Virus record (IMG/VR): IMGVR_UViG_3300027969_000039
Coordinates: 62,001-126,000 of that record
DNA length: 64,000 nucleotides
Direction: 5' to 3' (one strand)
The notes below the pieces were generated by a model. It was not told the DNA's origin. It searched no databases and was given only the letters and a program-made list of their open reading frames with translations. The first letter of the stretch is position 1, and every line of letters starts with the position of its first letter. Positions 14,841 to 29,649 of the stretch are shown here, in pieces. Made by a program: the position numbers and the translations under genes.

Positions 14841-15661
14841 ACTTTAAGTATTTCTTCCAAAGAGTATAACTCTTTCATATAGGGTGACACATTATCTAAT
14901 ACAGATATTGTTAAGTCACCCTTTCTTCTTGGGCCGTGTTTTACATCAAAGTCAGCATCATTGACCTTCTTGTATAGATCAACAATCTGTCTAACTGAAC
15001 GACCTATACCGTGACCTAATGATTCTATTTGATTGCTTGGTTTCTCAATTGCAGTATGTAATGCATCACATATCTCATTAACATGCACATAGTCACGAAT
15101 GCAAGTTCCATCAAATGTATTATAATCTGTACCAAAGATAGTAAACTCACCCTTGTCTTTTGCCTGCATTAAATTGTGCATCAATCCATCTGGATTGGTT
15201 GGCGCAAATCCATCGCTACCAATTACATTGTAGAATCTAAAGATAGTATATGGTGTAGGTCTATGCTGTGTACAATATTCACGCACAACATCTTCTGCGG
15301 CACGTTTACTTATACCATATGCACTAGCACAACCTTCTGCTGCACCAGTACTAGCAAATATAAAGTTCTTTGTTTTTATCTTGTTGATGACATTCATTGT
15401 GCCATTTAAGTTAGTGATGTAATATTGAATAGGAATTTGTTCACTTTCACCTACATTAACTAATGCAGCCAAATGAATTATTGCGTCAAATTCAATTGAT
15501 AAGTCAATTAGTTTGCGTATATCATGTTGATAGAATTCACGCAATCCGTCAGCTTGTGGAATATTGATATCTAGTCCATGCACTTCATACTTGTCAGCTA
15601 ACATCTTAATTAGATGACTACCAATATATCCTGAACAACCTGTTATTAATATTTTTTTCAT
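14837..15661 (-). CDS. NAD-dependent epimerase (GalE-like)
   Basis: GCSGYIG Rossmann motif; YGISK catalytic motif; RDYVHV. Confidence 0.9.
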   Translation of the reverse strand: MKKILITGCSGYIGSHLIKMLADKYEVHGLDINIPQADGLREFYQHDIRKLIDLSIEFDAIIHLAALVNVGESEQIPIQYYITNLNGTMNVINKIKTKNFIFASTGAAEGCASAYGISKRAAEDVVREYCTQHRPTPYTIFRFYNVIGSDGFAPTNPDGLMHNLMQAKDKGEFTIFGTDYNTFDGTCIRDYVHVNEICDALHTAIEKPSNQIESLGHGIGRSVRQIVDLYKKVNDADFDVKHGPRRKGDLTISVLDNVSPYMKELYSLEEILKV

Positions 15662-17016
15662 GTAAATGAAAACAGACTTTCGCCTGTCTCTTCCTCTGTT
15701 GGTTTGTATGTTGGGTCTTTACTTAGATAACTATTATCATCTGTGTATATATTAACAATAAATTTGTAACGGTTAGCCAACACACTTTCAAAATCTTCAC
15801 GGGCTAAATGACTACGATTCAATTCTTTGATATAGTCACGGTAGCATATTGTATCATAATTATTAATCTTTGCTGCATTTGTATTGCTGCGTTTTGCTAC
15901 AAAATCATCTAAGAACTTTATCCAACCTTGTGCAGTATCATCATCTAGTTTTTTGATATAGTCTAATGCACCAGTATTGTAATAGTTGTCAACAATATAT
16001 AACATACTAATTAGATTGCTAGCGTTTGCTAGTTTCTCTTTATAGAAATATTTTTCATCAAAGTTATCAGACCATTCTTGATTGTCTAATACAACGCATG
16101 GCATATGACCAAGACATTCACTAAACGCAAAAGGATAATTTTCACCTAATGCTGGCATAAAGAATACTTTACAACTCTTAATGAAGTCTACCTTTTCTTG
16201 TCCTACAATAGCTACTTTAATTTCATAGTCTGTAATACCTGCTTCACTAAATGCTTTCTCAAACTTCTTAGCACCAGTACTATTAGTCATTACTTTGCAA
16301 GGTAAACCTGTTTCTTTCATTACTTTAATATAAGCGGACGGGTTCTTGCGTTCTTCCCATCGTCCAATAAACAATACACCACTACGAGGTCCATTGTTAG
16401 GTTCAAGCAATTTTCTCTCACTTAATGGCATACGCAATAGTGATACATTCTTTGCACCATACTTAGTCATCTCATCAACATTCTTTTGACTTTGTGTTCC
16501 TACAAAACTATGTGATAGTTCCATATGCTTGTTAAAGAAGTTATGATATTCATCTAAGCATACATCACTAAAGTCTTGTTCATCACGGAACACCATGCTA
16601 TATGAATGAGTATAGAATACAACTGGAATATACTTACCTATTCCCATTGCATAAGCAGCACTCATTGCCTCTTGCGTGTTACACACTAGCATATCATAGA
16701 TATTAGACTCAAAAGCAAGCATGAGACTTTTTCTAAAGTTAACCATCTTTTCAAAATTGATACTATCACTAAATGCAAATGTACCTGTATGATCTGAATA
16801 GCGTATACCAGAATCTGTATATATGATATTTGCACCCAATGACTTAACCAATGTAGCTAAATCGTTTGTTGGTTCTTTATCTAATATGATATCAACTTTC
16901 CAGTTGATACGATCTCCTAGTTCAGTAAATCCCTTAGCAAATTGACCTATACCACCATGTGTTATAAAGTGCTGATCACTAATTAAAAATCCAATACGTT
17001 TATTATATATCCGCAT
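15658..17016 (-). CDS. GT-B (GT4-like) glycosyltransferase
   Basis: GGIGQF, FIGRWEERKNP and ENYPFAFSE (E-x7-E). Confidence 0.8.
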   Translation of the reverse strand: MRIYNKRIGFLISDQHFITHGGIGQFAKGFTELGDRINWKVDIILDKEPTNDLATLVKSLGANIIYTDSGIRYSDHTGTFAFSDSINFEKMVNFRKSLMLAFESNIYDMLVCNTQEAMSAAYAMGIGKYIPVVFYTHSYSMVFRDEQDFSDVCLDEYHNFFNKHMELSHSFVGTQSQKNVDEMTKYGAKNVSLLRMPLSERKLLEPNNGPRSGVLFIGRWEERKNPSAYIKVMKETGLPCKVMTNSTGAKKFEKAFSEAGITDYEIKVAIVGQEKVDFIKSCKVFFMPALGENYPFAFSECLGHMPCVVLDNQEWSDNFDEKYFYKEKLANASNLISMLYIVDNYYNTGALDYIKKLDDDTAQGWIKFLDDFVAKRSNTNAAKINNYDTICYRDYIKELNRSHLAREDFESVLANRYKFIVNIYTDDNSYLSKDPTYKPTEEETGESLFSFT

Positions 17017-17200
17017 TCCATACCTCATCTACAGCCGGGACAGTAATCCATTCAGTTAATTCTTTTCTAATTAGAAATGAACCTGTTCTTGGATTTGTTA
17101 TGCTGTAATCTGTTATTTCACGTTCATAACGATATTGCAATATCTTCTCTGGACCTTCTTCCCAATTGGGTGTAACAAGCCAACGCATCTCAAATTTCAT
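17003..17200 (-). CDS. hypothetical protein
   Basis: 65-aa ORF. Confidence 0.6.
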   Translation of the reverse strand: MKFEMRWLVTPNWEEGPEKILQYRYEREITDYSITNPRTGSFLIRKELTEWITVPAVDEVWNADI

Positions 17201-17537: not shown

Positions 17538-18380
17538 TTAAGTGCCCCATTCGTTTTTGAATAACGGCACTTGTAGTCTATCACTGTACCGCCATCCTTT
17601 TCGCATTGCCATTTCTGCAACCGCCCTATTATTAAGATTGTACACCCGCTCAACGCCACCACAAGGCATAAGATAGACATGACCACGAAAACCCCTCTTA
17701 CGATACGCATTTACTGCCTCCTCAGCTTCTTCCATATCCTCGTTAGTAGCTACTACAAATTTGAGATATGTATGCCCAACTTGGCTATATTCATAGATTA
17801 TGTCTGGGCAGATAGCATCATCCCACTTCTCACCACTGATGCTGAGTTTAGGACTGACGCTGAATGTGATAGAACCCATGCTACGACTTGTACACCATTT
17901 ATTCAAGAAGAATCGTAGATCCTGATGTAATGATTGTGTACCATTAGTCTCAAAAGTTAGTTCTTGTAAGCTACGCATCTTCTCGTTTGAAAGTAAATCA
18001 ACAAAACTACGCTGCCAACCTAGTAGTGGCTCACCACCAGTGATGACAAGATGCTCATCTAACCAACGCTTCTCTGGCAACATATCCATGATACTACTAA
18101 CAATACTATCAGTTTCAAGCATTGGACTTAAGTCTTTGAATCTGGGATCCCAACTCGCATAGCTATCACATCCTGTACTGACAAGTGGTAACATTTTGTA
18201 ATCAGTATACTTTGTCGGGTCGATATTATTTGCTTCCTCGCTTAGTTTACCTTTCGGCATACCAAAGCCTGCACATTTGAAGTTACATCCGAATGTTCGT
18301 AGAAATACTGAGGGGACACCCATGTATCTACCTTCACCTTGAATGCTATAGAATAGTTCTGCTATTTTTAATTTTGCCAT
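17538..18380 (-). CDS. queE: 7-carboxy-7-deazaguanine synthase (radical SAM)
   Basis: ELFYSIQGEG, VFLRTFGCNFKC, ITGGEP, ETNGT, SVSPK and RLQVPL motifs. Confidence 0.9.
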   Translation of the reverse strand: MAKLKIAELFYSIQGEGRYMGVPSVFLRTFGCNFKCAGFGMPKGKLSEEANNIDPTKYTDYKMLPLVSTGCDSYASWDPRFKDLSPMLETDSIVSSIMDMLPEKRWLDEHLVITGGEPLLGWQRSFVDLLSNEKMRSLQELTFETNGTQSLHQDLRFFLNKWCTSRSMGSITFSVSPKLSISGEKWDDAICPDIIYEYSQVGHTYLKFVVATNEDMEEAEEAVNAYRKRGFRGHVYLMPCGGVERVYNLNNRAVAEMAMRKGWRYSDRLQVPLFKNEWGT

Positions 18381-18383
18381 GTT

Positions 18384-19481
18384 TTATTGCCTGAATGAAT
18401 TTATGTCACCTAAATATACTTTTTTGTTTTTAAAAATATCATCTTTTAATATTTCTTTTAGTAAAATTTTATCTTCTGCGTTTAAATTTAATCTATCGTA
18501 CATAATGTTATCTAAATGTCCCCACTGCCGTATACTATTAAAATATATACCTGTCAAGTTTTCATATGATAATTGCCAATTAATATAGTCTTTAATTTCT
18601 TTATAATTACCTTTTTGGACAGTAAAAGAAGTACTCCAGCCAATAAAATTTTTAAAACTGTTACTTATAATCATTTCATTAAGAAATTTTAAATTTTCAT
18701 CTAATTTATCTTTAGATCCATTTATTCTTATCTTTGAATAAGTTTCATTTGAAAATGCATCGATACTTACTGTAATATGTGTGATATTATTCCATAATGG
18801 TTTTATTTGATTCCAGCGTGATTCTGTCATTAAAATACCGTTGGTCATTAGTTTTATTGTTAAATTTTCATTTAGATTTTTTGTTGACAATGTTTTTAAG
18901 TAATTCCAATAAGTAGGACTTGCAAAAGCATCTCCACTACCAGTAATGTTTATACTAACCTTTTCACCTTGTTCTAATAAATAATCAACAAGTTTTTCAA
19001 CTTTGTCATTGATATTATCTATTTGTTTATTTTCTCCCAATTTATGAAGTATTAAATTATTACGACAACTAGGACATTGCAAATTACATGATAAATCATA
19101 ACAAAAATGAATTATGATTGAATTAGAATTTTTATAAAAATCTAATAATTGCAAAGGTACAATTGTATTACCAGGCATTACTTTATCATTTAACATTTGA
19201 CTAATAAAAGGACAATAGTCATTGCAGTTTGTGAATTTACCCTCACTCATATCTGATATCATAGCTAGTCGTTCTGAATTATTAATGATATCTTCTATTG
19301 AATCTGTAATAATATTGCCGCAAAATTTTGGTAACCAAGAAAAACAACATATAGTAATATCACCATTGTGGTGAATTTCTAAATGTTTTGATATTTTATA
19401 ACAGCCGAAATTTTTTAAATATTCCTGTGTTCTTGCATACTCATTTTCTGATTTCATTAAAAAATTCATGTTATGATTCAA
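18384..19481 (-). CDS. radical SAM protein with N-terminal SPASM/Twitch-like domain
   Basis: CNLQCPSC (Cx3Cx2C), GSGDAF, MTNG; N-terminal GDITICC; markedly AT-rich. Confidence 0.8.
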   Translation of the reverse strand: MNHNMNFLMKSENEYARTQEYLKNFGCYKISKHLEIHHNGDITICCFSWLPKFCGNIITDSIEDIINNSERLAMISDMSEGKFTNCNDYCPFISQMLNDKVMPGNTIVPLQLLDFYKNSNSIIIHFCYDLSCNLQCPSCRNNLILHKLGENKQIDNINDKVEKLVDYLLEQGEKVSINITGSGDAFASPTYWNYLKTLSTKNLNENLTIKLMTNGILMTESRWNQIKPLWNNITHITVSIDAFSNETYSKIRINGSKDKLDENLKFLNEMIISNSFKNFIGWSTSFTVQKGNYKEIKDYINWQLSYENLTGIYFNSIRQWGHLDNIMYDRLNLNAEDKILLKEILKDDIFKNKKVYLGDINSFRQ

Positions 19482-19960
19482 TCTTTAAATTCATTATCTT
19501 CTCTGTGTCCTTGACGACCTGCCATGTTTGAATCAGTCTCACGTACTTCTACTTTACAGCACCAAACACGTTTGGCTTCTTCACTGCCGCAGTTGGGTAA
19601 GAAGATAGTGTTCACATATTCATATAAGAAATCACTGATACCTTCACATCCTGTCTTTTCAACCTCTGTAATTTTTGCTAGTTTAAGTTTACCTAGATTC
19701 AATAGATGTTCACGCATCGGGTCATCTTGTGCGACTAGTAATGTATGATCGAACCATTCTTCTAATTTTTCTTTGAGTGGTTTCAAGCCACCAAAGTCAG
19801 TCACCCAGTTTCGTGCATCTAATGTATCCGCTTCAAATTCAAAATGAAACGACATTGCGTAACCATGAATCATGTTACAATGACTATCTGCACGCCATTG
19901 ACGATAAGCTACTGGACCTATCTGTTTGTACGTTTTTGTACTGAAATATTTTTTTGCCAT
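19478..19960 (-). CDS. queD: 6-carboxy-5,6,7,8-tetrahydropterin synthase
   Basis: HCNMIHGY, DFGGLK, FDHT, GCE and VRET motifs. Confidence 0.85.
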   Translation of the reverse strand: MAKKYFSTKTYKQIGPVAYRQWRADSHCNMIHGYAMSFHFEFEADTLDARNWVTDFGGLKPLKEKLEEWFDHTLLVAQDDPMREHLLNLGKLKLAKITEVEKTGCEGISDFLYEYVNTIFLPNCGSEEAKRVWCCKVEVRETDSNMAGRQGHREDNEFKD

Positions 19961-19968
19961 GTTGTTCT

Positions 19969-20042
19969 CCTATGTTAATTATAGCATAGGCAGCAGAATT
20001 TGTAAAGCGGGATGATGACCGAAGACCGCTATCTTTATTTAT
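19969..20042 (-). promoter_or_regulatory. late promoter plus structured 5' UTR of queD
   Basis: ATAAATA (20042-20036); AGCGG/CCGCU stem with a cUUCGg-like loop; CCUAUG/CAUAGG hairpin overlapping the RBS. Confidence 0.45.
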
Positions 20043-20496
20043 CCTTTGATTCAGCTTGTACTACACGCTTACGCAAACTACTGCTACTGAAACTATGGTC
20101 ACGGCTATTGAATACTAATTCAATCTTACGCTTCTCGCAGATTGCTCTACCAGTAAAGTCTTTCTCCATGTACTCAACCCCTAGTATACGCACATCTACT
20201 GGCAATGTCAACAGTATGTCTTCCAAATCTTTTTCTGTATTGTAAACAACAATTTCATCTACAAAACGGACAGCACTTAAACTGATTTGGCGTTCAACAA
20301 TACTTTGAATGGGAGCATTCTTATCTGGTCTATCCCATTGTGCATTATTTTGTAACCCAGCAATGAGGTAATCGCAATGATTCTTAGCTTCACTAAGCAT
20401 TGCGATATGTCCTGCATGTAATATATCAAATTGCGAGAACACGATACCTATCTTTAGGCCTTGTAATTTTAGTTCTTTGATACGGTTGAATATCAT
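20035..20496 (-). CDS. cytidylyltransferase (TagD/RfaE-like)
   Basis: FDILHAGHI (HxGH), LIAGL, ER..L.AVRFVDE and SSSSLR motifs. Confidence 0.85.
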   Translation of the reverse strand: MIFNRIKELKLQGLKIGIVFSQFDILHAGHIAMLSEAKNHCDYLIAGLQNNAQWDRPDKNAPIQSIVERQISLSAVRFVDEIVVYNTEKDLEDILLTLPVDVRILGVEYMEKDFTGRAICEKRKIELVFNSRDHSFSSSSLRKRVVQAESKDK

Positions 20497-20765
20497 TCTT
20501 CAACTCCAAAAAAGTGTTCTTTAATTGCTACATAACTGTCAACACCACATTGAACATAACCATCCCAATGTGTGTCCTTCATCATAAGTTCATCTTCCAG
20601 CACAGGCAGATATTGTTCTCTTACTTGATTCATACATTCAGCTATAATCAATTCAGCAAGATTTTCTAAGTTTTGTTTGTCATCATCATGCCCGTATAAG
20701 CTAGACCGTTTTAATGCCCAATCAAATCCAGCCTGTTCAGCAAGTTGTTGAATTCGTTCGTTCAT
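20493..20765 (-). CDS. MNERI-family small protein, dispersed copy
   Basis: MNERIQQLAEQAG...ENLAELIIAEC...IKEHFFGVEE. Confidence 0.8.
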   Translation of the reverse strand: MNERIQQLAEQAGFDWALKRSSLYGHDDDKQNLENLAELIIAECMNQVREQYLPVLEDELMMKDTHWDGYVQCGVDSYVAIKEHFFGVEE

Positions 20766-21445
20766 TTCCCACCCCGAGCCAATTGATAGAATTCTGCTCT
20801 TGCTGCTGGATCACTTTTGAATCCACCACCTAATTTACTTGTAACAGTACTAGAGCCAGTATCTTCTACACCTCTTGATTTAACACAATAATGTTGTGCA
20901 TCAATCATGACCGCAACATCTTCTGTCTCAAGGATATATTGCAATGCGTGAAAGATTTGTTCTGTCAATCGTTCTTGTATTTGTGGACGCTTGCTAAAGT
21001 ATTCTACGATACGATTGATTTTACTCAATCCAAGTACTTTCTGATTGGGAACGTATGCCACAGTTGCTAGTCCATCGATGACTACAAAGTGATGTTCGCA
21101 ATTGCTTTGTACATTGATATTGCGTTCGCATACCATTTCGTTGTACTTCATCTTGTTATCAACTGCTGTACATTTAGGAAATGCCTCATAATCTAATCCC
21201 CAAAAGATTTCATTGACATACATCTTTGCTACACGTTTTGGGGTGTCAATCAGACTATCATCTGTTAAGTCAAGACCTAATGCTGTCATAATATCAGCAA
21301 ATAATACTTCAATGACTTCAATCTTGCCTTTACGGTCGATGATTTGACCTGTCTCTTTGATAGGAGTTTCAACTCCCATCTTAACCAAATGTTCGTGTAC
21401 TTTTTGACCCAACTCTGGATCTGTTTTTGTTTTATTATAACTCAT
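20762..21445 (-). CDS. folE: GTP cyclohydrolase I
   Basis: TPKRVAK, SNCEHH, GLSKINR, QIQERLT and HYCVKSRG motifs. Confidence 0.95.
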   Translation of the reverse strand: MSYNKTKTDPELGQKVHEHLVKMGVETPIKETGQIIDRKGKIEVIEVLFADIMTALGLDLTDDSLIDTPKRVAKMYVNEIFWGLDYEAFPKCTAVDNKMKYNEMVCERNINVQSNCEHHFVVIDGLATVAYVPNQKVLGLSKINRIVEYFSKRPQIQERLTEQIFHALQYILETEDVAVMIDAQHYCVKSRGVEDTGSSTVTSKLGGGFKSDPAARAEFYQLARGGK

Positions 21446-21480
21446 AGATAACCTTCCTTTGTGATGGTTTTTGTTTTGAA

Positions 21481-21518
21481 ATGTAAGCTACCGTTGTGTA
21501 GCTTACATATTTATTTAT
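21481..21518 (-). promoter_or_regulatory. tandem late promoter and 11-bp hairpin upstream of folE
   Basis: ATAAATAAATA (21518-21508) followed by the ATGTAAGCTAC-N6-GTAGCTTACAT inverted repeat (21481-21508). Confidence 0.55.
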
Positions 21519-21524
21519 CACAGA

Positions 21525-21713
21525 TTAAGCCTTAGCTTCTTTTCTTGCTGCTTTTTCAGCGGTGATTTCATTACGGCGAGCCTTGACTGCTTTAGCTAGT
21601 TCACCCAATGCTTTACGGGCACGAGTTCCTGCTGCTGCATTACCTTTTTCAAATTTTTCATGTTCGGCTTCGTATGCTGCCAATTGTGTTTTAATATCAT
21701 TATGTGCGTTCAT
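21525..21713 (-). CDS. histone H1-like (Hc1-type) small basic protein
   Basis: KFEKGNAAAGTRARKALGEL motif. Confidence 0.75.
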   Translation of the reverse strand: MNAHNDIKTQLAAYEAEHEKFEKGNAAAGTRARKALGELAKAVKARRNEITAEKAARKEAKA

Positions 21714-21738
21714 TTTATTTCCTTTTTAAAATTTTTTT

Positions 21739-22122
21739 TTATTCGTCAAGTCTGGTGATTTCTAAATCACAATCAATAATCATTTCGCATTCGTCTTGAC
21801 TCCAGCCGTGTTCTTCTAAGTCAAGCCAAGAATTACCTTCTTCAAAGAATTCTTCTATCCAAGCTGTAGTTTCTTCATCACAGTCATCTGTGTCAACTTC
21901 TTCCCAGCAACCATCGCTAGTTTCAACTAGTTCAGCTTCATATCCGCAGTCGTACATATCTACTCCTGCTTCAATATCAGGGGGATTATCATCTTCTGTT
22001 TCTACAGTAAATTCTCCCCAACGCCATCCTGTTTCAACCATGACCTTATTACCATCTTTAGTAAGATAGTTACGTTCAATGATTGATTTCTTCCATGTTG
22101 GTTTTACACTCCATATTGCCAT
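21739..22122 (-). CDS. hypothetical acidic protein
   Basis: 127-aa ORF with an AAAGGA RBS. Confidence 0.7.
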   Translation of the reverse strand: MAIWSVKPTWKKSIIERNYLTKDGNKVMVETGWRWGEFTVETEDDNPPDIEAGVDMYDCGYEAELVETSDGCWEEVDTDDCDEETTAWIEEFFEEGNSWLDLEEHGWSQDECEMIIDCDLEITRLDE

Positions 22123-22123
22123 T

Positions 22124-23299
22124 TTAATATTTCCTTTCTTTAGTGTGTTTTCTGTAATCAGTACTCATGCGTAGCATATCATCGCCCTTGCCCTCTAATA
22201 TATCACAGATTCTATCAATCGTGCTATCGTTACGGTCACTTATCTTTCCCATGTTCTTATGAGGCTCTTGTAGAAGCCTACGTAACTTACCAATAGCATT
22301 ATCAATGCTCCAAGGGATATACAAACGGTCAGGATCGTTAGCGAAAGTTTCAGGGAAGCTACGATAAGCAGGATAGAGAACATTGCATCCGAGTGCATCA
22401 GCCTCACTGACTGTGTTCGAAACCCAATCTTGTAACGCACAGTTAAATACAACCCGACTATCATTAACAATGTTGTAGTATTCATTCTTTTCTAAATCCT
22501 CATGTATTGTCAATAGTCCACGACTCACCAAGTCGCGGGTTCGTTGCATATAGCTGTCGCTATTAGATTTAAGTTTACCCCCGCTACACACGCAGAATTT
22601 AATATCAGTGTCTGGGTTTTCAGTGTACCATTGTTCAATGAGGTCCATATAGAAATCAGGTTGTTTCTCCTGATCCCAACGGGCACTGAATACTACACGA
22701 TTCTTTCGTTCATTAAATGGCTTGATACTAGCGACACGACCTTGTACTTCACTCTTGCCAAATGCTAATCCACTGATATTGTAGATTGGAGCACGCCAAC
22801 CTGCAATCTTCATATGCATTACCATTTCTTCATTAGTTGCTAGTACACCGTCTACGAACGAATCAACCATCTTTTCATAATGCCCCATAAATTCTGACAT
22901 ATTCCAAACATGTACAAAATCATCAGGATCAATAGACTGGGCAAGACAGCGAACAAAAATACGAGGACGGTGCTCACTACTGATTTGATTGAGTATATAA
23001 GGTAGGCTCTCAATACCGGGCTGAAACATGTCCTCAAAGTAGATAACATCTTCATTGTTCAGTTCTCCTGCTTTCATCATCTTGATTAGATTCATCAGTT
23101 GACTCATACCGTAGTATGTGCGACCATGTGCATCTAATACTTGACCCGTTACTATTGCTTGGTCATTACTAAGTGTTTCCCCGGGTACTACAACATAGTT
23201 GATACCTCTAAGATCAAACACCGTAGTATTCCACTCTTGCAATTGCAGAGTGTACCTTGCTTTGTAGGGCTCAAGCCCCATGTAATATAGCTTACGCAT
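22124..23299 (-). CDS. GT-B glycosyltransferase
   Basis: VVFSARWDQEKQP, VVFNCALQDW.S..V.EA..LG, YPAYRSFPE; start MRKLYY at 23299. Confidence 0.75.
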   Translation of the reverse strand: MRKLYYMGLEPYKARYTLQLQEWNTTVFDLRGINYVVVPGETLSNDQAIVTGQVLDAHGRTYYGMSQLMNLIKMMKAGELNNEDVIYFEDMFQPGIESLPYILNQISSEHRPRIFVRCLAQSIDPDDFVHVWNMSEFMGHYEKMVDSFVDGVLATNEEMVMHMKIAGWRAPIYNISGLAFGKSEVQGRVASIKPFNERKNRVVFSARWDQEKQPDFYMDLIEQWYTENPDTDIKFCVCSGGKLKSNSDSYMQRTRDLVSRGLLTIHEDLEKNEYYNIVNDSRVVFNCALQDWVSNTVSEADALGCNVLYPAYRSFPETFANDPDRLYIPWSIDNAIGKLRRLLQEPHKNMGKISDRNDSTIDRICDILEGKGDDMLRMSTDYRKHTKERKY

Positions 23300-23505
23300 T
23301 ATGGACGAGCGTTTTCTTGCCACTGATCTCTCGCAACTTTTCCAGTTGCGAATTTTGTATACTGACGATAGACATAACTACGTTGGTCGTAGAGTTCTGC
23401 TTCGTTGTACTTATAACCAAAATCCACGCAGAATTCTAGATATTTCTCTAGGTCCTCAAAGATTTGTTGAACACGTGGGTTTGATTGAAAAGTTTGTTTT
23501 GCCAT
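23299..23505 (-). CDS. hypothetical protein
   Basis: 68-aa ORF with RBS. Confidence 0.65.
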   Translation of the reverse strand: MAKQTFQSNPRVQQIFEDLEKYLEFCVDFGYKYNEAELYDQRSYVYRQYTKFATGKVARDQWQENARP

Positions 23506-23514
23506 TTTATTTCC

Positions 23515-23967
23515 TTAGATAGCGAGGTTAGTTAAAGGTTTAGTTACATTATAAAAAATCGTAGCACCATTCTCATTGTCCTCTGAGACAGTGATAGTGA
23601 TATTACGATCTGGATACCGAGTTGCAATAACCTCATAAAGATCATCACTAATCATTTCACAACTTTTGTAATACAATGCAAGAATGCCTTGAGAATATTG
23701 ATTCTCTAACCATCGTTTGAATTGAATAAACTCAATATCACGGTCGTTGTGAAATACTTCAATCGTCACCTCAAAGTGAAAGATGTGACGATGTGGAGTT
23801 GCTAAAAAGCTAACATCATACTCATCACCTGTTGCCAAGTTAGGGTCTGTTGCTGCTGCGGGGTATTTATGAATACCTTCTTTTTGAAAACGTACAAAAA
23901 TTGTACGCATTGCTTTATCTTTAATTCGTTGACGTTTTTCAGCCAATACTTGCGTTTGTTGTTCCAT
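23515..23967 (-). CDS. QueD-like T-fold protein (DpdL-like candidate)
   Basis: PHRHIFHFEV, EFIQFKRWL, SCEMI and VSEDNENGA parallel the QueD layout; two genes from dpdA-like. Confidence 0.6.
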   Translation of the reverse strand: MEQQTQVLAEKRQRIKDKAMRTIFVRFQKEGIHKYPAAATDPNLATGDEYDVSFLATPHRHIFHFEVTIEVFHNDRDIEFIQFKRWLENQYSQGILALYYKSCEMISDDLYEVIATRYPDRNITITVSEDNENGATIFYNVTKPLTNLAI

Positions 23968-24176
23968 TATCTATCATCCTCAAAATTAACTCGTTCATGG
24001 TCTTCATCCCATTGAAGTCTTGTATATCTTCTTAACTCTAAGTATACATCAAGCCTATCTATTTTCATATCTTTAAGGGCATCTACAGTAAAGTCTTTAT
24101 CCTGTTCTGCTGCTAGTATTTTAGCATCAAGGTCCTTGAGTTGTTGTTCTAATCTTGCAATTCGTTGTCTATACAT
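23967..24176 (-). CDS. hypothetical coiled-coil protein
   Basis: 69-aa ORF. Confidence 0.6.
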   Translation of the reverse strand: MYRQRIARLEQQLKDLDAKILAAEQDKDFTVDALKDMKIDRLDVYLELRRYTRLQWDEDHERVNFEDDR

Positions 24177-24180
24177 ATTA

Positions 24181-25776
24181 TTACTCCAAAACTAATGACA
24201 TAGCGTCATCGCTATCTTCTATTTCCTCAATTGGTTCTTCATCTACAGTAAACAATTCATTAAACATAGTCATAGCATTAACTGTTTTTTTACCACTAAT
24301 ACCTTGGCTACCTGATTGGAATTGTTTCCAATAACTACTATGATAGTCAATCAACTCCCATGCTTCATCTTTAGTTTTCTTTGAAAAGATTTCATCAACT
24401 AATGTAGTGAAGAATCTATCACCTTCAAACTTATGAACAATCATCTTAGGAATCACACCTTGTTCATATTGCCGATTAGCCTCTTGAACTGCATTCATAT
24501 GCATCCAAACATTGTGACTTTGAATCAATGTGTAACTCAATGTATCCCAACTTGTTTTAGTTTCTTTGCCATGTTGTCCTAAGAATCCTACCCCACGATA
24601 ACACATATCTTTGAGTGTAAGTAAATCAGTTACTGGACTATCCGTAAATGTTTTATGTATTCCTTCAGCTAACACCGCATCACGAAACTTGCGAGTATCA
24701 CTAGCATATGATTTCTTCTCGGCAGTCTTTTCCATTTGATAAGACCACTTCTTATTATGTTGAATAGTTGTATTAAAATATGCCAATCCTTTAGCTGCAC
24801 TATAAAATGGACTTGCACAGTCAAAAGTAATTTGAAGTTTAGGATTATGATATTTACGAATAGCTTTTTGAATATCAGTAAACAATACTGCATATTCTAA
24901 TATACTTGTACCCAAACAATGTACTAAATCATGCTTATCTTCACGCAATAACCCGTCGTGAATTATTTCAGTCAATCTACGCAATGTCAAATGAATGTCA
25001 ATTTTATTTTGTCCACCGAACGCCCATCCGTTAAAATGATTATCTGGATAGATATTTGGGTCACAGTATTTTTTCATTTCAGTATACCATGTATCGCTGG
25101 CTGTATGATTACGACCCTGCAACACATTTAAAAACTTGCATTTCCCTGAGCGATTTTTTATAAAATATTCATTATTGATATGAGTAGCTGTTATAGCTTC
25201 TTCAACATTTTTGATACCATGCAGACTTTTTCCAGTACCTGGAATAGTGTTACCATCACTATCTTTTTCTACTGTCTTAGGGTCTTTCATATGAAAAGTA
25301 AGTTCAGACTGACTTGGTATATCTAAACACATACCATAGTCCATGTATGTGTCCATCCATGTTAATACTGCTTTGCGTTTTTTCATAGCACGAGGACAGT
25401 TAGGATCCTTCCAGTCTGCGGGCCATTGACCTTTTAAAATTTGAAAGCCACCACTGTCACCCAACATGAATGTACCTTGCTCACGCTCACGTATGATACT
25501 CTCATTGTTATCGTTCACAGTGGTATCTAAGTTAGCATGACCGGCAGAGTATAGTCCCCACTTGTAATAGTAAAGACCTTCTTTGCTGTTTAAGAAGTTT
25601 AATTTCTCAACATCGCCCTTGAACCCTGCAGGGATGCGAGCCTGATCAAAGTATGGTTCACCCTTGCGTTGCTTACCCAAACCAGCAATATAGAAACTGC
25701 TGACTGCGGGTAAGAACAATGCCCATTCAGGGTCTTGTTTTAGTGATAGATTATCCTGGACCATATGGTAAATCAT
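24181..25776 (-). CDS. dpdA: DpdA/TGT-like 7-deazaguanine transglycosylase
   Basis: GDSGGFQ, MCLDIP, NVLQG, GWAFGG, HCLGT and FDCASP motifs; context of folE/queD/queE. Confidence 0.8.
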   Translation of the reverse strand: MIYHMVQDNLSLKQDPEWALFLPAVSSFYIAGLGKQRKGEPYFDQARIPAGFKGDVEKLNFLNSKEGLYYYKWGLYSAGHANLDTTVNDNNESIIREREQGTFMLGDSGGFQILKGQWPADWKDPNCPRAMKKRKAVLTWMDTYMDYGMCLDIPSQSELTFHMKDPKTVEKDSDGNTIPGTGKSLHGIKNVEEAITATHINNEYFIKNRSGKCKFLNVLQGRNHTASDTWYTEMKKYCDPNIYPDNHFNGWAFGGQNKIDIHLTLRRLTEIIHDGLLREDKHDLVHCLGTSILEYAVLFTDIQKAIRKYHNPKLQITFDCASPFYSAAKGLAYFNTTIQHNKKWSYQMEKTAEKKSYASDTRKFRDAVLAEGIHKTFTDSPVTDLLTLKDMCYRGVGFLGQHGKETKTSWDTLSYTLIQSHNVWMHMNAVQEANRQYEQGVIPKMIVHKFEGDRFFTTLVDEIFSKKTKDEAWELIDYHSSYWKQFQSGSQGISGKKTVNAMTMFNELFTVDEEPIEEIEDSDDAMSLVLE

Positions 25777-26137
25777 TAACCTCTTCTTTTTTAATTAAAG
25801 TTCTGACAATACGTATCTGTTCTTCTTTTTGCTTGATAGTGTCTAGTAAATCTTTGATAGTGGGATTAGTTTCTGCTAATGCTGATAATTCCATTTCTTC
25901 ATCACGCTTTTTTCTAGCCCAATCAAGTAATGATTCTGCATCAGATGATAACCCAATACTTGCATAGCTAGTATTCATTGTCATCCAAGTACTTCCGTCA
26001 AACACTTGCGTATCAGTACCATTAATACGTATCATCCCTTGAATAGGATTGTTTATATTCTGATTGATATAGGGAACACTAGTGTTCCCTGCGGAAACAA
26101 CGGTGTACTTACCCATTGGAGCTATACCCTTGATCAT
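25751..26137 (-). CDS. hypothetical protein
   Basis: 128-aa ORF, ATGA-coupled to the clamp gene. Confidence 0.65.
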   Translation of the reverse strand: MIKGIAPMGKYTVVSAGNTSVPYINQNINNPIQGMIRINGTDTQVFDGSTWMTMNTSYASIGLSSDAESLLDWARKKRDEEMELSALAETNPTIKDLLDTIKQKEEQIRIVRTLIKKEEVNDLPYGPG

Positions 26138-26865
26138 TTTTTGTTCGCTGGAAGCAAGTAAACATATGTTGCGATACCACTATCAACTGTAATCTCAGTC
26201 GCACCTTGTTCGCTAATCTTGACTTTCTTGTCACCAACTTGATCCATGATACTCAAGAATTCTTTAACGGGCCACTTATGTGTACCAGCTAGTGTACCAG
26301 TCACTGGGGTGTTGAACACAAAGTTACCACTGTGAGTTGATGCATCACCAAAGTATATCTTCAAATCACTGCCATCAGTTTTGAATACAAAATGTTCTTC
26401 TTCGCTATTAGCATTTGCTTGCTTTTTAAGACGTTGAATACCTGCAACTGTCGGCTCAAATTCAACATTCCATTTAGCACCTTTGAATGATACACTCTTA
26501 ACTTTTTCATCGACTACGCTTTTAAGCATAAGACGATAGTCATTAACAAAATCACCGTTCTTTGTTTCGAAATGAATAGTAGATGGAACATCTACACCAT
26601 CACGCTGAGTACGAACAACATTGATTTTAGCATCTTTGTCATATTCGTCAAACCCGATAATTGTCTTGAGTTTACTCAAGTTAGGCATACCAAACACACC
26701 GATAAAGTCAGCTAGTGGGTCTTTGAATGTACCACTTACGATAACATTTTTGTTTTCAGCTACTGCATTGATAGTAGTCTCTGTATCAGTACCAGTAACT
26801 TTAACAAGTTCAATTGTACCAAGACCATGCGTATGGTCAATTAAGTCTTTTAAATAATCTTTCAT
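26134..26865 (-). CDS. putative DNA sliding clamp (gp45/PCNA-like)
   Basis: 243-aa beta-rich protein directly downstream of the DNA polymerase; two-domain size. Confidence 0.65.
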   Translation of the reverse strand: MKDYLKDLIDHTHGLGTIELVKVTGTDTETTINAVAENKNVIVSGTFKDPLADFIGVFGMPNLSKLKTIIGFDEYDKDAKINVVRTQRDGVDVPSTIHFETKNGDFVNDYRLMLKSVVDEKVKSVSFKGAKWNVEFEPTVAGIQRLKKQANANSEEEHFVFKTDGSDLKIYFGDASTHSGNFVFNTPVTGTLAGTHKWPVKEFLSIMDQVGDKKVKISEQGATEITVDSGIATYVYLLPANKK

Positions 26866-26907
26866 TTTGTTTCCTTTGTTTAAAATATTTAGGAGTTCCT
26901 ATCACGT

Positions 26908-26936
26908 ATTATAGTGGAATATATTGCAATAGTCAA
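26908..26936 (-). promoter_or_regulatory. sigma70-type promoter
   Basis: TTGACT-N17-TATAAT; CTAAATA late motif just downstream. Confidence 0.75.
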
Positions 26937-26943
26937 CACCAGT

Positions 26944-29649
26944 TTAACCGAATGTGAATAAATCATCAAATGTTGAATTAACATCGGTGTTGCTTCTGAT
27001 ATCCCAATCTAATACACCAAGCAAGTTGTCTATCTTTTCATCAACCAATGTTGATTCCATTAGTAAATCATCAAATGGCAATTCTTTGAACCAACTTGGC
27101 AATCTCAATTCATCAACCGGATATGCGATACTAGTGAAACCTAATGCATTATCTTTGAGTTTACATACAACAATCTTCATACCATCTATAATCTTCTGGC
27201 TGTAGTTATCACCGTATACTCTGCGTAGATAGTTCCAGTTGATTGCTGCCCGTGCATGACCGACACCACACTTACCAGTCTTTTCAAACTCAATGGTATG
27301 CTTAGTCAAATTGTTAACACTCTTTGGACTACCCTTAGTCCAGCTGTCTTGTTCAGACAATTTGTTTTTGAATTCTTTGACCATTTCAATAACTTTATCC
27401 CTTTGAGCACCGGCAAGTACTTTTGTAAGTACATCCATTAAGAATTCTTGTATGTACTTTGGAGTATCAGCACGTTTCAAGTCAAGACCCATAGCTTTGA
27501 TATCACCATTCTTGCCGTTTGTGTCTTTACGCTTGCCTTCTTTATCAAAGATATTAATAGCATAACGCTTCTTAGTAATAAAGATAGCACGATCACCAAT
27601 CAATTCACGCCCAGCTTTAATGATTAAACCATTCTTTCTTGGAGCATGAAATGCTCGTTCCATGAATGCAGGGAATGATTCGTTTGCTTGTTCAGCAATA
27701 CTATCATATAGTCCGATACAAGTTTCTTTGTTCCACTCTAGTTCCCCGTTCGCTATTTGCGAATTGAGAATAGGATATGCAGTAAAGTAACATGAGTCAG
27801 TATCACCATACACAATAGCATTACCATCGTGTGCATATTCACCTGCAATTGTTTCGTTGATTGTACTCATCATATGTTTAACAATCTGACGACCACTTAA
27901 TGTAACTGATTGCCCGATACGCTTATCATAGAATCTGCAATGTTCATTCAATAGTGCGCCATACGCAGAGTTCAACAAAATCTTACGAACAAGTTGACGT
28001 TTATCATAATATTCATATTGGTCAGTGCCATAAGCTGCTTTTGCTTTAGCTTGCATTTCTTTACGTTCACTATACCAGCGAGACAATAGTCCTGGGACTA
28101 CGCCCTCTTTCTCATAAGTAAAGATTGTACCATTCGCAGATAGCATCCATGGGCGATTGCTATCAAATATAATCTTCCATATTTCAGCAGCACTATATTC
28201 TTCACTGCGACCATCTTCATAATCTAATGTAAGCATTACTCCACGGTCTTGATTCATAATAGCTGTATACTCTAATACACTAAACAAGTTTTCCCATAGA
28301 ATAGCACCAGTAACATCATCGTCACCTTCTTTGAATCGTTTCTTAAGGCTAGCAAGTTGCTTGCCCTTATCGTCCATATACTTGTCAGTTAATGTCTGAC
28401 GGACTTGACCAACGATGGTTTCTCCTGCCATGTTGAGGGCACGAATAACCGAGGGATAGAGCGAGTTAATGTCAACTGCTCCGACATATTCGTGCATGCC
28501 TTTTTTGGGCGTAGCAACGAAGGCACCTGCTGCTGGCGTTGTTTCTTCTGCATTTTCATTCTTTCGTTTTTTGTCTGGCACTACTAAACCGCGTTCATGC
28601 GCTTCATTGAAAATTGCCATTTCAATCATAGCTACAGAACCCATTACTGTTGGCAGTAATACTGTATTCTCATGTGCTAGCTGATTAGCTAGTTCTAAGA
28701 ATTGAAGTTTGTTGTGAATCTTCACTAACAACATGGTATCTTGACGATTATATTCAATAAACTTTTTAAAGTCTTTGTTATACAACTGGTCAAGAGTACC
28801 TTCATATTGAGTTTTGTTCTCTCCTACTTCCATCTCACCAATAGCATCTAACTTATATGAATGTCGTGATTCATAGTTATACTTTTTGTAGAGTTGTAAA
28901 TAGTCCAAATGAATACGACCTACTAAATCGTATGTAGTTTCACTTTTGCCAAATCTTTCGTATTCTCTTGCTTTAGGAAGTTGACCCATCAAGCAAAACT
29001 TGCGTGTATCATCCTTACTCATTACTCTTGTGACACGATTAACCATATAAGGTATATCATATCCTTCACTGTTCCAGCCAGTCATTACATCAGCATCTTC
29101 AATGAGTTGAAAGAAAACATCAAACATATCCTTCTCGTTAGTGAAAAGCATACAGTTCTCAAACTCATTACATATTTCTTGCGCTGTTTCTGGACTCATG
29201 TGCTTAGGAGCAATGACCAATGTAACTAATGTATCTTGCCAATCCAAATATAATGAGATAGCAGTCACTGGATTGAATGGGTCAGTCGTAGGACTAAAAC
29301 CTTTCTCAGGGTCAAAGTCTACCTCAATGTCAAAGAAGCAAGTATGTAGTTTAGGAACATCTGCCTTAAGATAGTTTTCACTAAGGCAACGAAAAATTAC
29401 TGGCACATCACTTTCAAATAATTTCTTACCTGAATGTATACGTTTTTCTTTTTCAAACTCTTGTCGTTTGCGTGTACTGAAACGATTTACAGGGTCACCA
29501 TATATACTGCGATACTTTCCCTTATGATCGGGATAGTAGAGTACATAGTTTGTGGGATATTCTTTGTATTGACGCTTTCCGTTCTGGTCTCGTTCCACCA
29601 CATAGATACGATCCTCATCCCTTGAGTGTATTGCATCCACATAGGACAT
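26944..29649 (-). CDS. family B DNA polymerase (gp43-like)
   Basis: FDIEVD exonuclease motif; DINSLYPS, KILLNSAYG and YGDTDS polymerase motifs; no intein seen. Confidence 0.97.
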   Translation of the reverse strand: MSYVDAIHSRDEDRIYVVERDQNGKRQYKEYPTNYVLYYPDHKGKYRSIYGDPVNRFSTRKRQEFEKEKRIHSGKKLFESDVPVIFRCLSENYLKADVPKLHTCFFDIEVDFDPEKGFSPTTDPFNPVTAISLYLDWQDTLVTLVIAPKHMSPETAQEICNEFENCMLFTNEKDMFDVFFQLIEDADVMTGWNSEGYDIPYMVNRVTRVMSKDDTRKFCLMGQLPKAREYERFGKSETTYDLVGRIHLDYLQLYKKYNYESRHSYKLDAIGEMEVGENKTQYEGTLDQLYNKDFKKFIEYNRQDTMLLVKIHNKLQFLELANQLAHENTVLLPTVMGSVAMIEMAIFNEAHERGLVVPDKKRKNENAEETTPAAGAFVATPKKGMHEYVGAVDINSLYPSVIRALNMAGETIVGQVRQTLTDKYMDDKGKQLASLKKRFKEGDDDVTGAILWENLFSVLEYTAIMNQDRGVMLTLDYEDGRSEEYSAAEIWKIIFDSNRPWMLSANGTIFTYEKEGVVPGLLSRWYSERKEMQAKAKAAYGTDQYEYYDKRQLVRKILLNSAYGALLNEHCRFYDKRIGQSVTLSGRQIVKHMMSTINETIAGEYAHDGNAIVYGDTDSCYFTAYPILNSQIANGELEWNKETCIGLYDSIAEQANESFPAFMERAFHAPRKNGLIIKAGRELIGDRAIFITKKRYAINIFDKEGKRKDTNGKNGDIKAMGLDLKRADTPKYIQEFLMDVLTKVLAGAQRDKVIEMVKEFKNKLSEQDSWTKGSPKSVNNLTKHTIEFEKTGKCGVGHARAAINWNYLRRVYGDNYSQKIIDGMKIVVCKLKDNALGFTSIAYPVDELRLPSWFKELPFDDLLMESTLVDEKIDNLLGVLDWDIRSNTDVNSTFDDLFTFG

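What the first reader, a model, noticed from the sequence alone, without database searches (positions are those of the whole stretch)
17538..25776. 7-deazaguanine pathway lacking queC but with a second T-fold protein
Seen: folE, queD, queE, dpdA-like and a QueD-like T-fold gene (23515-23967); no queC, queF or gat-queC in the window. Known: FolE/QueD/QueE make CDG and QueC is needed for preQ0. As I recall, a QueD-like protein (DpdL) has been linked to decarboxylation giving 7-deazaguanine (dDG) in phage DNA. Inference: the genome may carry dDG or dCDG, or a derivative of these.
Basis: partly seen in the sequence, partly recalled or inferred. Interest (0 to 1): 0.6.

Follow-up and report, generated by a model that had tools for sequence, protein, structure and literature searches.

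The report
QueC-less deazaguanine DNA cluster with glycosyltransferases
A freshwater jumbo phage carries the known QueC-less "DpdL" gene set for replacing guanine in its DNA with 7-deazaguanine, but the set is tightly linked to sugar-transfer genes, so the final base may be a sugar-decorated deazaguanine that has not been described.

Summary

No true QueC or QueF exists in the 303-kb record, in a CheckV-100% relative, or in five complete DpdL phages. Two very divergent QueC-like PP-loop genes lie about 200 kb away in a radical-SAM array and are not conserved with the cluster. This is a new member of the DpdA3/DpdL kind described in 2023.

A GT-B glycosyltransferase (22124-23323) is a conserved neighbour of DpdL in seven phage lineages and in 61 of 78 diverse viral contigs. 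Here it comes with a nucleotidyltransferase, a GalE-like epimerase and a second GT. phiST, the phage in which dDG was measured, lacks this GT. A glycosylated deazaguanine is therefore plausible but unproven. The extra radical-SAM gene is a strain-specific insertion.

The parts
24181..25776 (-). DpdA-like DNA-guanine transglycosylase (531 aa, P0003); TGT fold, no Pfam hit
23515..23967 (-). DpdL homologue (proposed CDG decarboxylase, QueD-like). The true start is probably M20, at 23910.
   Evidence: Motif L55-x3-H59-R60-H61-x-F63. tblastn finds 28 phage records, including ACP17 (55%) and phiST (34%). phrog_17812 4.6e-31. hhalign against the phage QueD profile is only 72.7%, E 3.2e-5.
22124..23323 (-). 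GT-B (GT4-like) glycosyltransferase and conserved DpdL neighbour. Homologues start at residue 9 (23299).
   Evidence: AF2 pLDDT 88.1. PDB matches: glycogen synthase, BshA, MshA, PimA; E 3e-13, TM 0.6-0.7. BFVD: the ACP17 GT, TM 0.73/0.83. Linkage to DpdL.
20762..21445 (-). GTP cyclohydrolase I FolE
   Evidence: NF006824 321.6 bits (cut-off 202); PF01227 6.4e-62.
19478..19960 (-). QueD-type 6-carboxytetrahydropterin synthase (motif CxxxHGY)
   Evidence: PF01242 58.6 bits; phrog_2389 2e-41. 71% identical to ACP17 QueD. All QueDs of DpdL phages share CxxxHGY, including phiST's.
17538..18380 (-). QueE-type radical-SAM CDG synthase
   Evidence: phrog_2076 1.2e-50. NCBIfam QueE models give partial hits. 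C32, C36, C71 and D72 are invariant across phage QueEs.
20035..20496 (-). Cytidylyl/adenylyltransferase-family nucleotidyltransferase (RfaE domain II / TagD-like), HAGH motif
   Evidence: PF01467 5.3e-10; TIGR02199 3.5e-17; TIGR01518 2e-13. Sequence. Conserved in clade relatives and sits next to DpdL in 14 other viral loci.
15658..17028 (-). Second glycosyltransferase-like gene (456 aa)
   Evidence: Weak PF00534. hhalign to the GT399 family profile gives 59.7%, E 8.8e-5, aligning the R..EK.P and E-x7-E motifs. 43% identical (8e-121) to the GT1-like gene inside the BUCT-ZZ01 deazaguanine cluster.
14837..15661 (-). GalE-like NAD-dependent nucleotide-sugar epimerase/dehydratase (274 aa)
   Evidence: PF01370 5.3e-33. 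TIGR01179 GalE 163.9 bits, below the 262 cut-off. phrog_540 nucleotide-sugar epimerase 1.6e-41. Conserved in relatives.
18384..19481 (-). Radical SAM protein with N-terminal SPASM/twitch domain; strain-specific insertion between queD and queE
   Evidence: PF04055 1.6e-10; PF13186 4.1e-8; NF033640 6.4e-13. Present only in the identical contigs L006/L007, and at 55% in L080, among about 40 relatives. No hit in cultured phages. Belongs to a viral family.
21525..21713 (-). Hc1 histone-H1-like DNA-binding protein (62 aa)
   Evidence: PF07432 1.5e-14. Conserved in relatives at 74-100%.
23299..23505 (-). 68-aa conserved ORF between dpdL and the GT; unknown function
   Evidence: No family hit. Conserved at 62-97% in relatives.
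21739..22122 (-). 127-aa ORF; variable among relatives; unknown function
   Evidence: No family hit. Present in only some relatives.
26134..29649 (-). Upstream context: family-B DNA polymerase (26944-29649) and a 243-aa sliding-clamp-like protein (26134-26865)
   Evidence: PF00136 8.4e-39. The 243-aa protein is 33% identical to the Phosso 'sliding clamp beta'. The order is syntenic with PA5oct and Phosso.

Best explanation
This is a DNA hypermodification operon of a freshwater jumbo phage.

Core pathway: FolE, QueD and QueE turn GTP into 7-carboxy-7-deazaguanine (CDG). There is no QueC, so preQ0 is not made. DpdL, a QueD-like protein, is proposed to decarboxylate CDG to 7-deazaguanine (DG). 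The TGT-fold DpdA-like enzyme then exchanges guanine in phage DNA for the deazapurine after replication. This gives dDG-type DNA that resists restriction enzymes.

Added layer (inferred): the conserved GT-B glycosyltransferase next to dpdL, helped here by a nucleotidyltransferase, a GalE-like epimerase and a second GT, probably attaches a sugar or related group from a nucleotide-activated donor. The acceptor would be the deazapurine, either as free base or in DNA.

Status of each step:
- Shown here: gene identities, folds, motifs, the absence of QueC, and gene linkage.
- Taken from the literature: dDG in phiST, the DpdL hypothesis, and guanine-site restriction resistance of the PA5oct relative.
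- Inferred: DpdL's activity, DNA rather than tRNA as the target, and any glycosylation.
For: - Genes and motifs.
- DpdA-like fold; link to the ACP17 DpdA.
- DpdL homology to the two DpdLs named in Cui 2023.
- QueC absent in the own genome, in a complete relative and in five complete DpdL phages. No QueF.
- The cluster lies next to the DNA polymerase and clamp and is syntenic with PA5oct and Phosso. PA5oct DNA resists G-site restriction enzymes and is hit by nucleases that sense modified G (PMC12191111).
- phiST, which has DpdL, DpdA3 and no QueC, has all G replaced by dDG.
- GT layer, fold: GT-B fold.
- GT layer, cultured phages: all five phage-database tblastn hits to the GT are DpdL phages with the gene within 2 kb of dpdL. 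HMM search adds PA5oct, Phosso and BCSR5.
- GT layer, viral contigs: 61 of 78 diverse viral GT loci carry dpdL; 38 are adjacent.
- Sugar genes recur in other DpdL clusters: an epimerase fragment in PA5oct, a second GT in BUCT-ZZ01, and the nucleotidyltransferase in 14 loci.
- Chemical precedent: the GT4 enzyme HuiG glycosylates a nitrogen of a free 7-deazapurine.
Against: - DpdL's decarboxylase activity has never been shown. Expression of DpdL plus DpdA from phiST and ACP17 in E. coli gave no dDG.
- My own profile tests of DpdL against QueD are weak: no Pfam PTPS hit, and hhalign gives 72.7%.
- DG has no obvious O or N handle at C7, so the acceptor atom for a sugar is unknown.
- Five complete DpdL phages, including phiST, have no such GT. 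The GT is therefore not needed for dDG, and it could serve another target.
- The GT is missing in two close relatives, L053 and L054.
- No chemical data exist for this phage. The record is 86% complete.
- Two QueC-like PP-loop genes exist elsewhere in the genome.
Confidence: 0.6

Rival explanations
1. The DNA carries plain dDG (or dCDG), as in phiST. The glycosyltransferases, nucleotidyltransferase and epimerase act on something else, such as a virion protein, the host envelope or another base, and sit in the operon only by co-regulation.
For: phiST makes dDG with FolE, QueD, QueE, DpdL and DpdA3 alone. Five DpdL phages have no GT homologue. Two close relatives lack the GT. DG offers no classical glycosylation handle.
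Against: The GT family is found in cultured phages only beside dpdL. It is adjacent to or near dpdL in 57 of 78 divergent viral loci, across T4-like, jumbo and other backbones. That pattern is hard to explain without a functional link. The only thymidylate-synthase homologue is a bona fide ThyA, and no Tet/JBP protein is present, so no hydroxymethyl-pyrimidine handle is evident.
Confidence: 0.3
2. The two remote QueC-like PP-loop proteins complete the pathway. Either they act as very divergent QueCs giving preQ0 or ADG, or they act like RoyL amide synthetases that couple CDG to an amine. The DNA base would then be a C7-amide or nitrile derivative rather than DG.
For: Both have the SGGxDS PP-loop and a C-terminal Cys cluster resembling QueC's zinc site (as recalled). 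They just reach the Pfam QueC cut-off (22.1 and 27.6 bits), and one hits phrog_1550 'QueC-like' at 4e-8. Divergent QueC homologues that amidate CDG are documented. One lies close to a beta-hydroxylase-like gene (one gene between them), as in some peptidyl-deazapurine clusters.
Against: The QueC equivalog model scores them at 19.7 and 15.0 bits against a cut-off of 150. They lie about 200 kb from the cluster, inside an array of about 10 radical-SAM genes. They are absent from the complete relative G001 and from all five complete DpdL phages. The only cultured-phage hit is weak. The presence of DpdL argues for the decarboxylation branch.
Confidence: 0.07
3. The TGT-fold enzyme modifies tRNA (phage or host) rather than DNA, so the cluster is a translational takeover module.
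For: All closest solved structures are tRNA-guanine transglycosylases. No biochemical test of DNA activity exists for this subfamily; attempts with DpdA3 in E. coli failed.
Against: The gene sits beside the DNA polymerase and clamp and is syntenic with PA5oct, whose DNA resists G-site restriction. Its profile links to the ACP17 DpdA. Every phage known to encode FolE/QueD/QueE with a DpdA-family protein and analysed so far has modified DNA. The Pfam TGT model does not hit it.
Confidence: 0.03

Closest known systems
DpdL/DpdA3 7-deazaguanine (dDG) system of Cellulophaga phage phiST (Cui et al. 2023, NAR 51:9214)
   Same: FolE, QueD (CxxxHGY), QueE, DpdL with LxxxHRHxF, a TGT-like transglycosylase, no QueC or QueF, next to replication genes.
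   Different: phiST's DpdA3 is 259 aa and only weakly related (hhalign 62%). phiST has a MazG and an ATPase in the cluster, and it has no GT, nucleotidyltransferase or epimerase. Its DpdL is 34% identical.
Pseudomonas jumbo phage PA5oct (Wroclawvirus) cluster EST35_0316-0322
   Same: Closest cultured DpdA-like protein (33%). Same order: DNA pol, clamp-like, DpdA, GT-like, DpdL, epimerase-like, QueE. Its DNA resists restriction at G-containing sites and is targeted by nucleases that sense modified G.
   Different: No nucleotidyltransferase or second GT was found in its local region or genome. Its DpdL motif reads HFH rather than HRH. The chemistry of its modification is unpublished in the papers I could search.
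Synechococcus phage BUCT-ZZ01 (T4-like freshwater cyanophage) and Acidovorax phage ACP17 clusters
   Same: BUCT-ZZ01 shares both GTs (62% and 43% identity) plus DpdL, FolE, QueD and QueE. ACP17 shares QueD (71%), FolE (63%), DpdL (55%) and the GT between dpdA and dpdL.
   Different: These are T4-like backbones of about 156 kb. Their DpdA-like proteins are very divergent from this one. BUCT-ZZ01 also has a purine phosphoribosyltransferase in its cluster.
Huimycin pathway glycosyltransferase HuiG (GT4 family) acting on a 7-deazapurine base
   Same: A GT-B/GT4-type enzyme that transfers a sugar from a UDP-sugar to a nitrogen of a free 7-deazapurine. It is a chemical precedent for the proposed extra step.
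   Different: It belongs to actinomycete secondary metabolism, acts on an O-methylated preQ0, and involves no DNA insertion enzyme.
Phage T4 alpha/beta-glucosyltransferases (sugar hypermodification of DNA bases)
   Same: GT-B fold enzymes that decorate a modified base in phage DNA. A cyanophage 'DNA alpha-GT' appears among the structural matches (rank 8, TM about 0.5).
   Different: They use the hydroxyl of 5-hydroxymethylcytosine. No hydroxymethyl-pyrimidine pathway is evident here. The closest folds are GT4/GT5 enzymes, not T4 AGT or BGT.

Membership tests
DpdL (proposed CDG decarboxylase) | Signature LxxxHRHxF replacing QueD's CxxxHGH | tested here: met
   P0002 has L55-ATP-H59-R60-H61-I-F63. 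L55, H59, H61 and F63 are invariant in 11 DpdL homologues. The signature is as given in Cui 2023.
DpdL (proposed CDG decarboxylase) | Sequence homology to the founding members (phiST CGPG_00067, ACP17) | tested here: met
   tblastn gives 55% and 2e-38 to ACP17, and 33.6% and 5e-5 to phiST. A family HMM hits 12 cultured-phage lineages.
DpdL (proposed CDG decarboxylase) | QueD-like T-fold | tested here: inconclusive
   No Pfam PTPS hit. hhalign of the DpdL profile against the phage QueD profile gives 72.7%, E 3.2e-5, over the C-terminal 46 columns only. Cui 2023 report HHpred 99.89% for the phiST protein. No structure was predicted here.
DpdL (proposed CDG decarboxylase) | Genome context: FolE+QueD+QueE+DpdA present, QueC absent | tested here: met
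DpdL (proposed CDG decarboxylase) | Catalyses CDG -> DG + CO2 | not testable with these tools
   Not demonstrated for any member; heterologous tests failed.
DpdA (DNA-guanine transglycosylase; DpdA3-like) | TGT (beta/alpha)8 fold | tested here: met
DpdA (DNA-guanine transglycosylase; DpdA3-like) | Catalytic aspartates in the DSGGFQ and FDCxxP motifs | tested here: met
   D107 and D319 are invariant in 88 homologues; sequence. Equating them with the TGT catalytic Asp residues rests on my knowledge of TGT and on the hhalign register with the ACP17 DpdA.
DpdA (DNA-guanine transglycosylase; DpdA3-like) | Sequence membership in subfamily DpdA3 as defined by phiST CGPG_00065 | tested here: inconclusive
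   hhalign of the family profile against phiST gp042 gives 62%, E 7.6e-5, over 82 columns. Against the ACP17 DpdA it gives 96.6%, E 5.9e-10. No Pfam TGT hit.
DpdA (DNA-guanine transglycosylase; DpdA3-like) | Exchanges guanine in DNA (not tRNA) for a 7-deazaguanine | not testable with these tools
   Inferred from context only.
QueC (7-cyano-7-deazaguanine synthase), for the remote ORFs P0004 and P0005 | Scores above the equivalog model TIGR00364 | tested here: not met
   19.7 and 15.0 bits against a cut-off of 150.3. The Pfam QueC model matches only the C-terminal roughly 55 residues (22.1 and 27.6 bits).
QueC (7-cyano-7-deazaguanine synthase), for the remote ORFs P0004 and P0005 | PP-loop SGGxDS and C-terminal Cys4 zinc site | tested here: met
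   Visible in the sequences. These features are shared with the wider PP-loop/QueC-like superfamily and do not prove QueC function.
QueC (7-cyano-7-deazaguanine synthase), for the remote ORFs P0004 and P0005 | Co-occurrence with the deazaguanine cluster in relatives | tested here: not met
   Absent from the complete relative G001 and from five complete DpdL phages. They are embedded in a radical-SAM array.
GT-B retaining glycosyltransferase (GT4-like), for 22124-23323 | Two-Rossmann-domain GT-B fold | tested here: met
   Model pLDDT 88.1. Foldseek E 3e-13 to glycogen synthase, BshA, MshA and PimA, TM 0.6-0.7.
GT-B retaining glycosyltransferase (GT4-like), for 22124-23323 | E-x7-E motif and R..EK.P motif | tested here: inconclusive
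   The R/E/K/P positions are invariant across six homologues (R215, E219, K220, P222). E-x7-E is present in the ACP17, PA5oct and Phosso proteins, but reads D-x7-E in this protein and in BUCT-ZZ01. Pfam GT1 models score below their cut-offs.
GT-B retaining glycosyltransferase (GT4-like), for 22124-23323 | Donor and acceptor identity | not testable with these tools
   Unknown. Linkage to dpdL is the only clue.

The most novel reading that the evidence does not exclude
In GT-bearing DpdL phages (this abundant freshwater jumbo-phage clade, BUCT-ZZ01, ACP17, PA5oct, Phosso, Xanthomonas X1/BUDD and BCSR5), the deazaguanine made by FolE/QueD/QueE/DpdL is further glycosylated. The donor is nucleotide-activated, built here by the nucleotidyltransferase and the GalE-like enzyme. 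The result would be a sugar-decorated 7-deazapurine in DNA: the first glycosylated purine-type base in a phage genome. It could also explain why DpdL plus DpdA alone failed in E. coli.
Probability: 0.35. Interest if true: 0.85.

Novelty: new variant of a known kind. Interest (0 to 1): 0.62.

Why it matters
The QueC-less DpdL branch is the least understood route to 7-deazaguanine DNA. Its key enzyme has never been shown to work, and the chemistry has been measured only in one small group of marine phages.

This window shows that the branch is common in a very abundant group of freshwater jumbo phages: more than 450 viral contigs, and reads from 17 studies. It also shows that in most lineages outside phiST the branch travels with a dedicated glycosyltransferase and often with sugar-nucleotide genes.

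That gives a concrete, testable lead to a possible new DNA base and to the missing partner of DpdL. Cultured phages (BUCT-ZZ01, ACP17, PA5oct) are available for mass spectrometry and genetics. It also matters for restriction evasion, for nucleases that sense hypermodified DNA, and for sequencing of such genomes.

Tried and rejected
1. Near-identity DNA search of the cluster against cultured phages found no match.
2. Pfam, NCBIfam and PHROG scans, and PDB sequence searches, found nothing for the DpdA-like protein or for 88 of its homologues. Fold prediction was needed.
3. The Pfam TGT model does not hit anywhere in the genome.
4. The only QueF 'hit' is a T-fold echo inside FolE.
5. I considered the second radical-SAM gene as a tailoring enzyme of the pathway. 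I rejected it as a core part because it is missing from nearly all relatives, where queD and queE are adjacent. It has only one weak paralogue hit in the genome and no cultured-phage relative.
6. I considered that the GTs act on hydroxymethyl-pyrimidines. I found only a bona fide ThyA, no ThyX and no Tet/JBP.
7. I considered the remote QueC-like genes as the missing QueC; see the rival explanations.
8. A PDB sequence search for the 456-aa GT-like protein found nothing.
9. The supplement of Cui 2023 is not held, so their list of DpdL phages could not be checked for the GT. The 2024 MMBR review is not held either.
10. The genome-wide search for the GT profile in five DpdL phages gave no hit, but that call had no positive control of its own. 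The same profile does find the GT in six other phages by local hmmsearch.
11. Read laying and complex prediction were not used. The older runs are kept only as contigs, which cannot show base modification, and I make no claim that the proteins bind each other.

Full report
**Source and layout.** The window is bases 62001-126000 of a 303,057-bp IMG/VR virus record with a CheckV completeness estimate of 86%. The genes of the finding all lie on the minus strand. They sit in a co-directional block that runs from a family-B DNA polymerase (26944-29649) down to 14837, where a plus-strand gene converges. The DNA belongs to a very abundant freshwater group. More than 450 IMG/VR stretches encode a relative of the DpdA-like protein; the best 80 kept are 81-100% identical. 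More than 7,900 relatives of the glycosyltransferase exist; the best 120 listed are 83-99% identical. The stretch or parts of it occur in runs from 17 lake, river and other aquatic studies.

**Checking the observation.**
- FolE (20762-21445) passes NCBI's equivalog cut-off at 321.6 bits.
- The 160-aa gene at 19478-19960 hits Pfam PTPS (7.6e-16) and the phage QueD PHROG (2e-41).
- The 280-aa gene at 17538-18380 hits the phage QueE PHROG over its full length (1.2e-50). It keeps the three cluster cysteines that are invariant in phage QueEs, including that of phiST.
- The QueD has CxxxHGY instead of the canonical CxxxHGH. So do the QueDs of all DpdL phages I aligned, including phiST, whose pathway is known to work.
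- The 150-aa ORF at 23515-23967 has no Pfam or NCBIfam hit. It does carry the exact signature that Cui et al. (2023) give for DpdL, LxxxHRHxF (L55, H59, R60, H61, F63).
- By tblastn this ORF finds 28 phage records. Among them are the two DpdLs that paper worked with: ACP17 (55%, 2e-38) and phiST (34%, 5e-5).
- My own test of its QueD-likeness is weak: hhalign 72.7% over the C-terminal third. For the T-fold I rely on the paper's HHpred result.

**Is QueC really missing?**
- A six-frame search of the whole record with Pfam QueC gives two borderline matches, far outside the window at about 283.6 and 296.8 kb.
- These ORFs (211 and 222 aa) have a PP-loop and a C-terminal cysteine cluster. Only the last 55 or so residues match the QueC model (22.1 and 27.6 bits).
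- NCBI's QueC equivalog scores them at 19.7 and 15.0 bits against a cut-off of 150.
- They sit in a 20-kb array of about ten radical-SAM genes, with a cupin hydroxylase-like gene and a GT2-like gene.
- A 348,701-bp relative rated 100% complete has no such gene and no QueC above cut-off.
- The complete genomes of PA5oct, Phosso, RHph_I1_18, ACP17 and phiST have no QueC match at all.
- QueF is absent.

True QueC is therefore absent. The QueC-like pair is an accessory of another, unexplained system. Divergent QueC homologues that couple CDG to amines are known (RoyL), so I keep that possibility as a low-probability rival.

Between dpdL and folE lies a 399-aa gene with weak GT1 hits. It has homologues placed next to dpdL or dpdA in ACP17, PA5oct and Phosso.
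- A tblastn of the whole phage collection (50,697 records) finds it in only five records: BUCT-ZZ01 (62% identity), Xanthomonas BUDD and X1, and ACP17 twice. All are DpdL phages, and in each the gene lies within 2 kb of dpdL.
- A family HMM adds PA5oct, Phosso and Burkholderia BCSR5.
- Using the family to fish IMG/VR gave 78 divergent loci carrying the GT. Of these, 61 also carry dpdL on the same strand: 38 directly adjacent and 19 within 2 kb. Many also carry the DpdA family, FolE and QueE.
- The modelled structure (pLDDT 88.1) is a GT-B fold closest to GT4/GT5 enzymes such as glycogen synthase, BshA, MshA and PimA. It is also close to the ACP17 protein (TM 0.73/0.83).

Other sugar genes lie in the same block:
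- a cytidylyl/adenylyltransferase-family enzyme with the HxGH motif (20035-20496);
- a GalE-like epimerase (14837-15661);
- a second GT-like protein (15658-17028), 43% identical to a GT1-like gene inside the BUCT-ZZ01 deazaguanine cluster.

All of these are conserved among the clade's relatives. The nucleotidyltransferase also sits directly upstream of dpdL in 14 other viral loci. PA5oct has an epimerase-family fragment between dpdL and queE.

By contrast, the second radical-SAM gene (18384-19481) is found only in the two identical contigs, plus one 55% copy elsewhere. In other relatives queD and queE are adjacent. It is a strain-specific insertion.

**Interpretation.** The core reading follows established pathway knowledge. 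FolE, QueD and QueE make CDG, and without QueC there is no preQ0. DpdL is the published candidate for decarboxylation to DG. A DpdA-family enzyme inserts the base into DNA. phiST, which has this gene set, has all its G replaced by dDG.

However, dDG has been measured only in the Cellulophaga phages. These lack the GT, as do four other complete DpdL phages. Cui et al. could not obtain dDG from ACP17 DpdL plus DpdA and suggested that another enzyme may be needed. In ACP17 the GT lies exactly between those two genes. Either the GT-bearing phages make a further, sugar-bearing derivative, or the GT takes part in the pathway in some other way.

A GT4 enzyme that glycosylates a nitrogen of a free 7-deazapurine is known from huimycin biosynthesis, so the chemistry has a precedent. 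I found no paper in the searchable library that links a glycosyltransferase to DpdL or reports a glycosylated deazaguanine in DNA. That library is incomplete: the supplement of Cui 2023 and the 2024 review were not available.

**Verdict.** The finding is real and its interpretation is sound. The conserved dpdL-glycosyltransferase module, with sugar-nucleotide genes, makes it a probable new variant. Cultured phages are at hand for a clear experimental test.

Noticed in passing
G000:C1:281001-301000 (locus L089), outside the window: A 20-kb minus-strand array of about ten radical-SAM genes, most with an N-terminal SPASM/twitch domain. It also holds two QueC-like PP-loop ATPases (211 and 222 aa), a cupin Asp/Asn beta-hydroxylase-like gene and a GT2-like gene. 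It is present in the identical contig but not in the complete relative. Function unknown.
   Followed up: partly
window 18384-19481 (-): A radical-SAM gene with an N-terminal SPASM domain is inserted between queD and queE in this strain only. It belongs to a virus-dominated family with no cultured-phage relative.
   Followed up: partly
window 21525-21713 (-): A 62-aa Hc1 histone-H1-like DNA-binding protein (PF07432, 1.5e-14) lies inside the modification cluster and is conserved in relatives.
   Followed up: no
L175:11254-12405 (Vibrio phage Bakedbeans) and L179:11452-12333 (Chryseobacterium phage MA9V-3): In these phages DpdL is the C-terminal part of a longer protein. Bakedbeans has about 270 extra N-terminal residues; MA9V-3 has a partial second DpdL-like repeat. 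The extra parts have no Pfam hit.
   Followed up: partly
window 19478-21445 vs L088 (ACP17); window 15658-17028 and 22124-23323 vs L093 (BUCT-ZZ01): QueD and FolE are 71% and 63% identical to those of T4-like phage ACP17, although the DNA polymerases are only about 25-28% identical. The two GTs are 62% and 43% identical to genes of a freshwater cyanophage. The modification module moves between unrelated phage backbones.
   Followed up: partly
window 23515-23967 and 22124-23323: The start codons of the longest ORFs are probably too far upstream. DpdL homologues begin near residue 20 (ATG at 23910), and GT homologues begin at residue 9 (ATG at 23299).
   Followed up: yes
L094:6338-6871 (Xanthomonas phage X1): Another DpdL+GT cluster carries a PAPS-reductase-family PP-loop protein (PF01507, 1e-13) next to FolE. 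This hints at further lineage-specific tailoring.
   Followed up: no
G000:C1:51230-52132 (L090): The phage encodes a bona fide thymidylate synthase ThyA (346 bits, above equivalog cut-offs). No ThyX or Tet/JBP was found, so there is no sign of hydroxymethyl-pyrimidine chemistry.
   Followed up: yes
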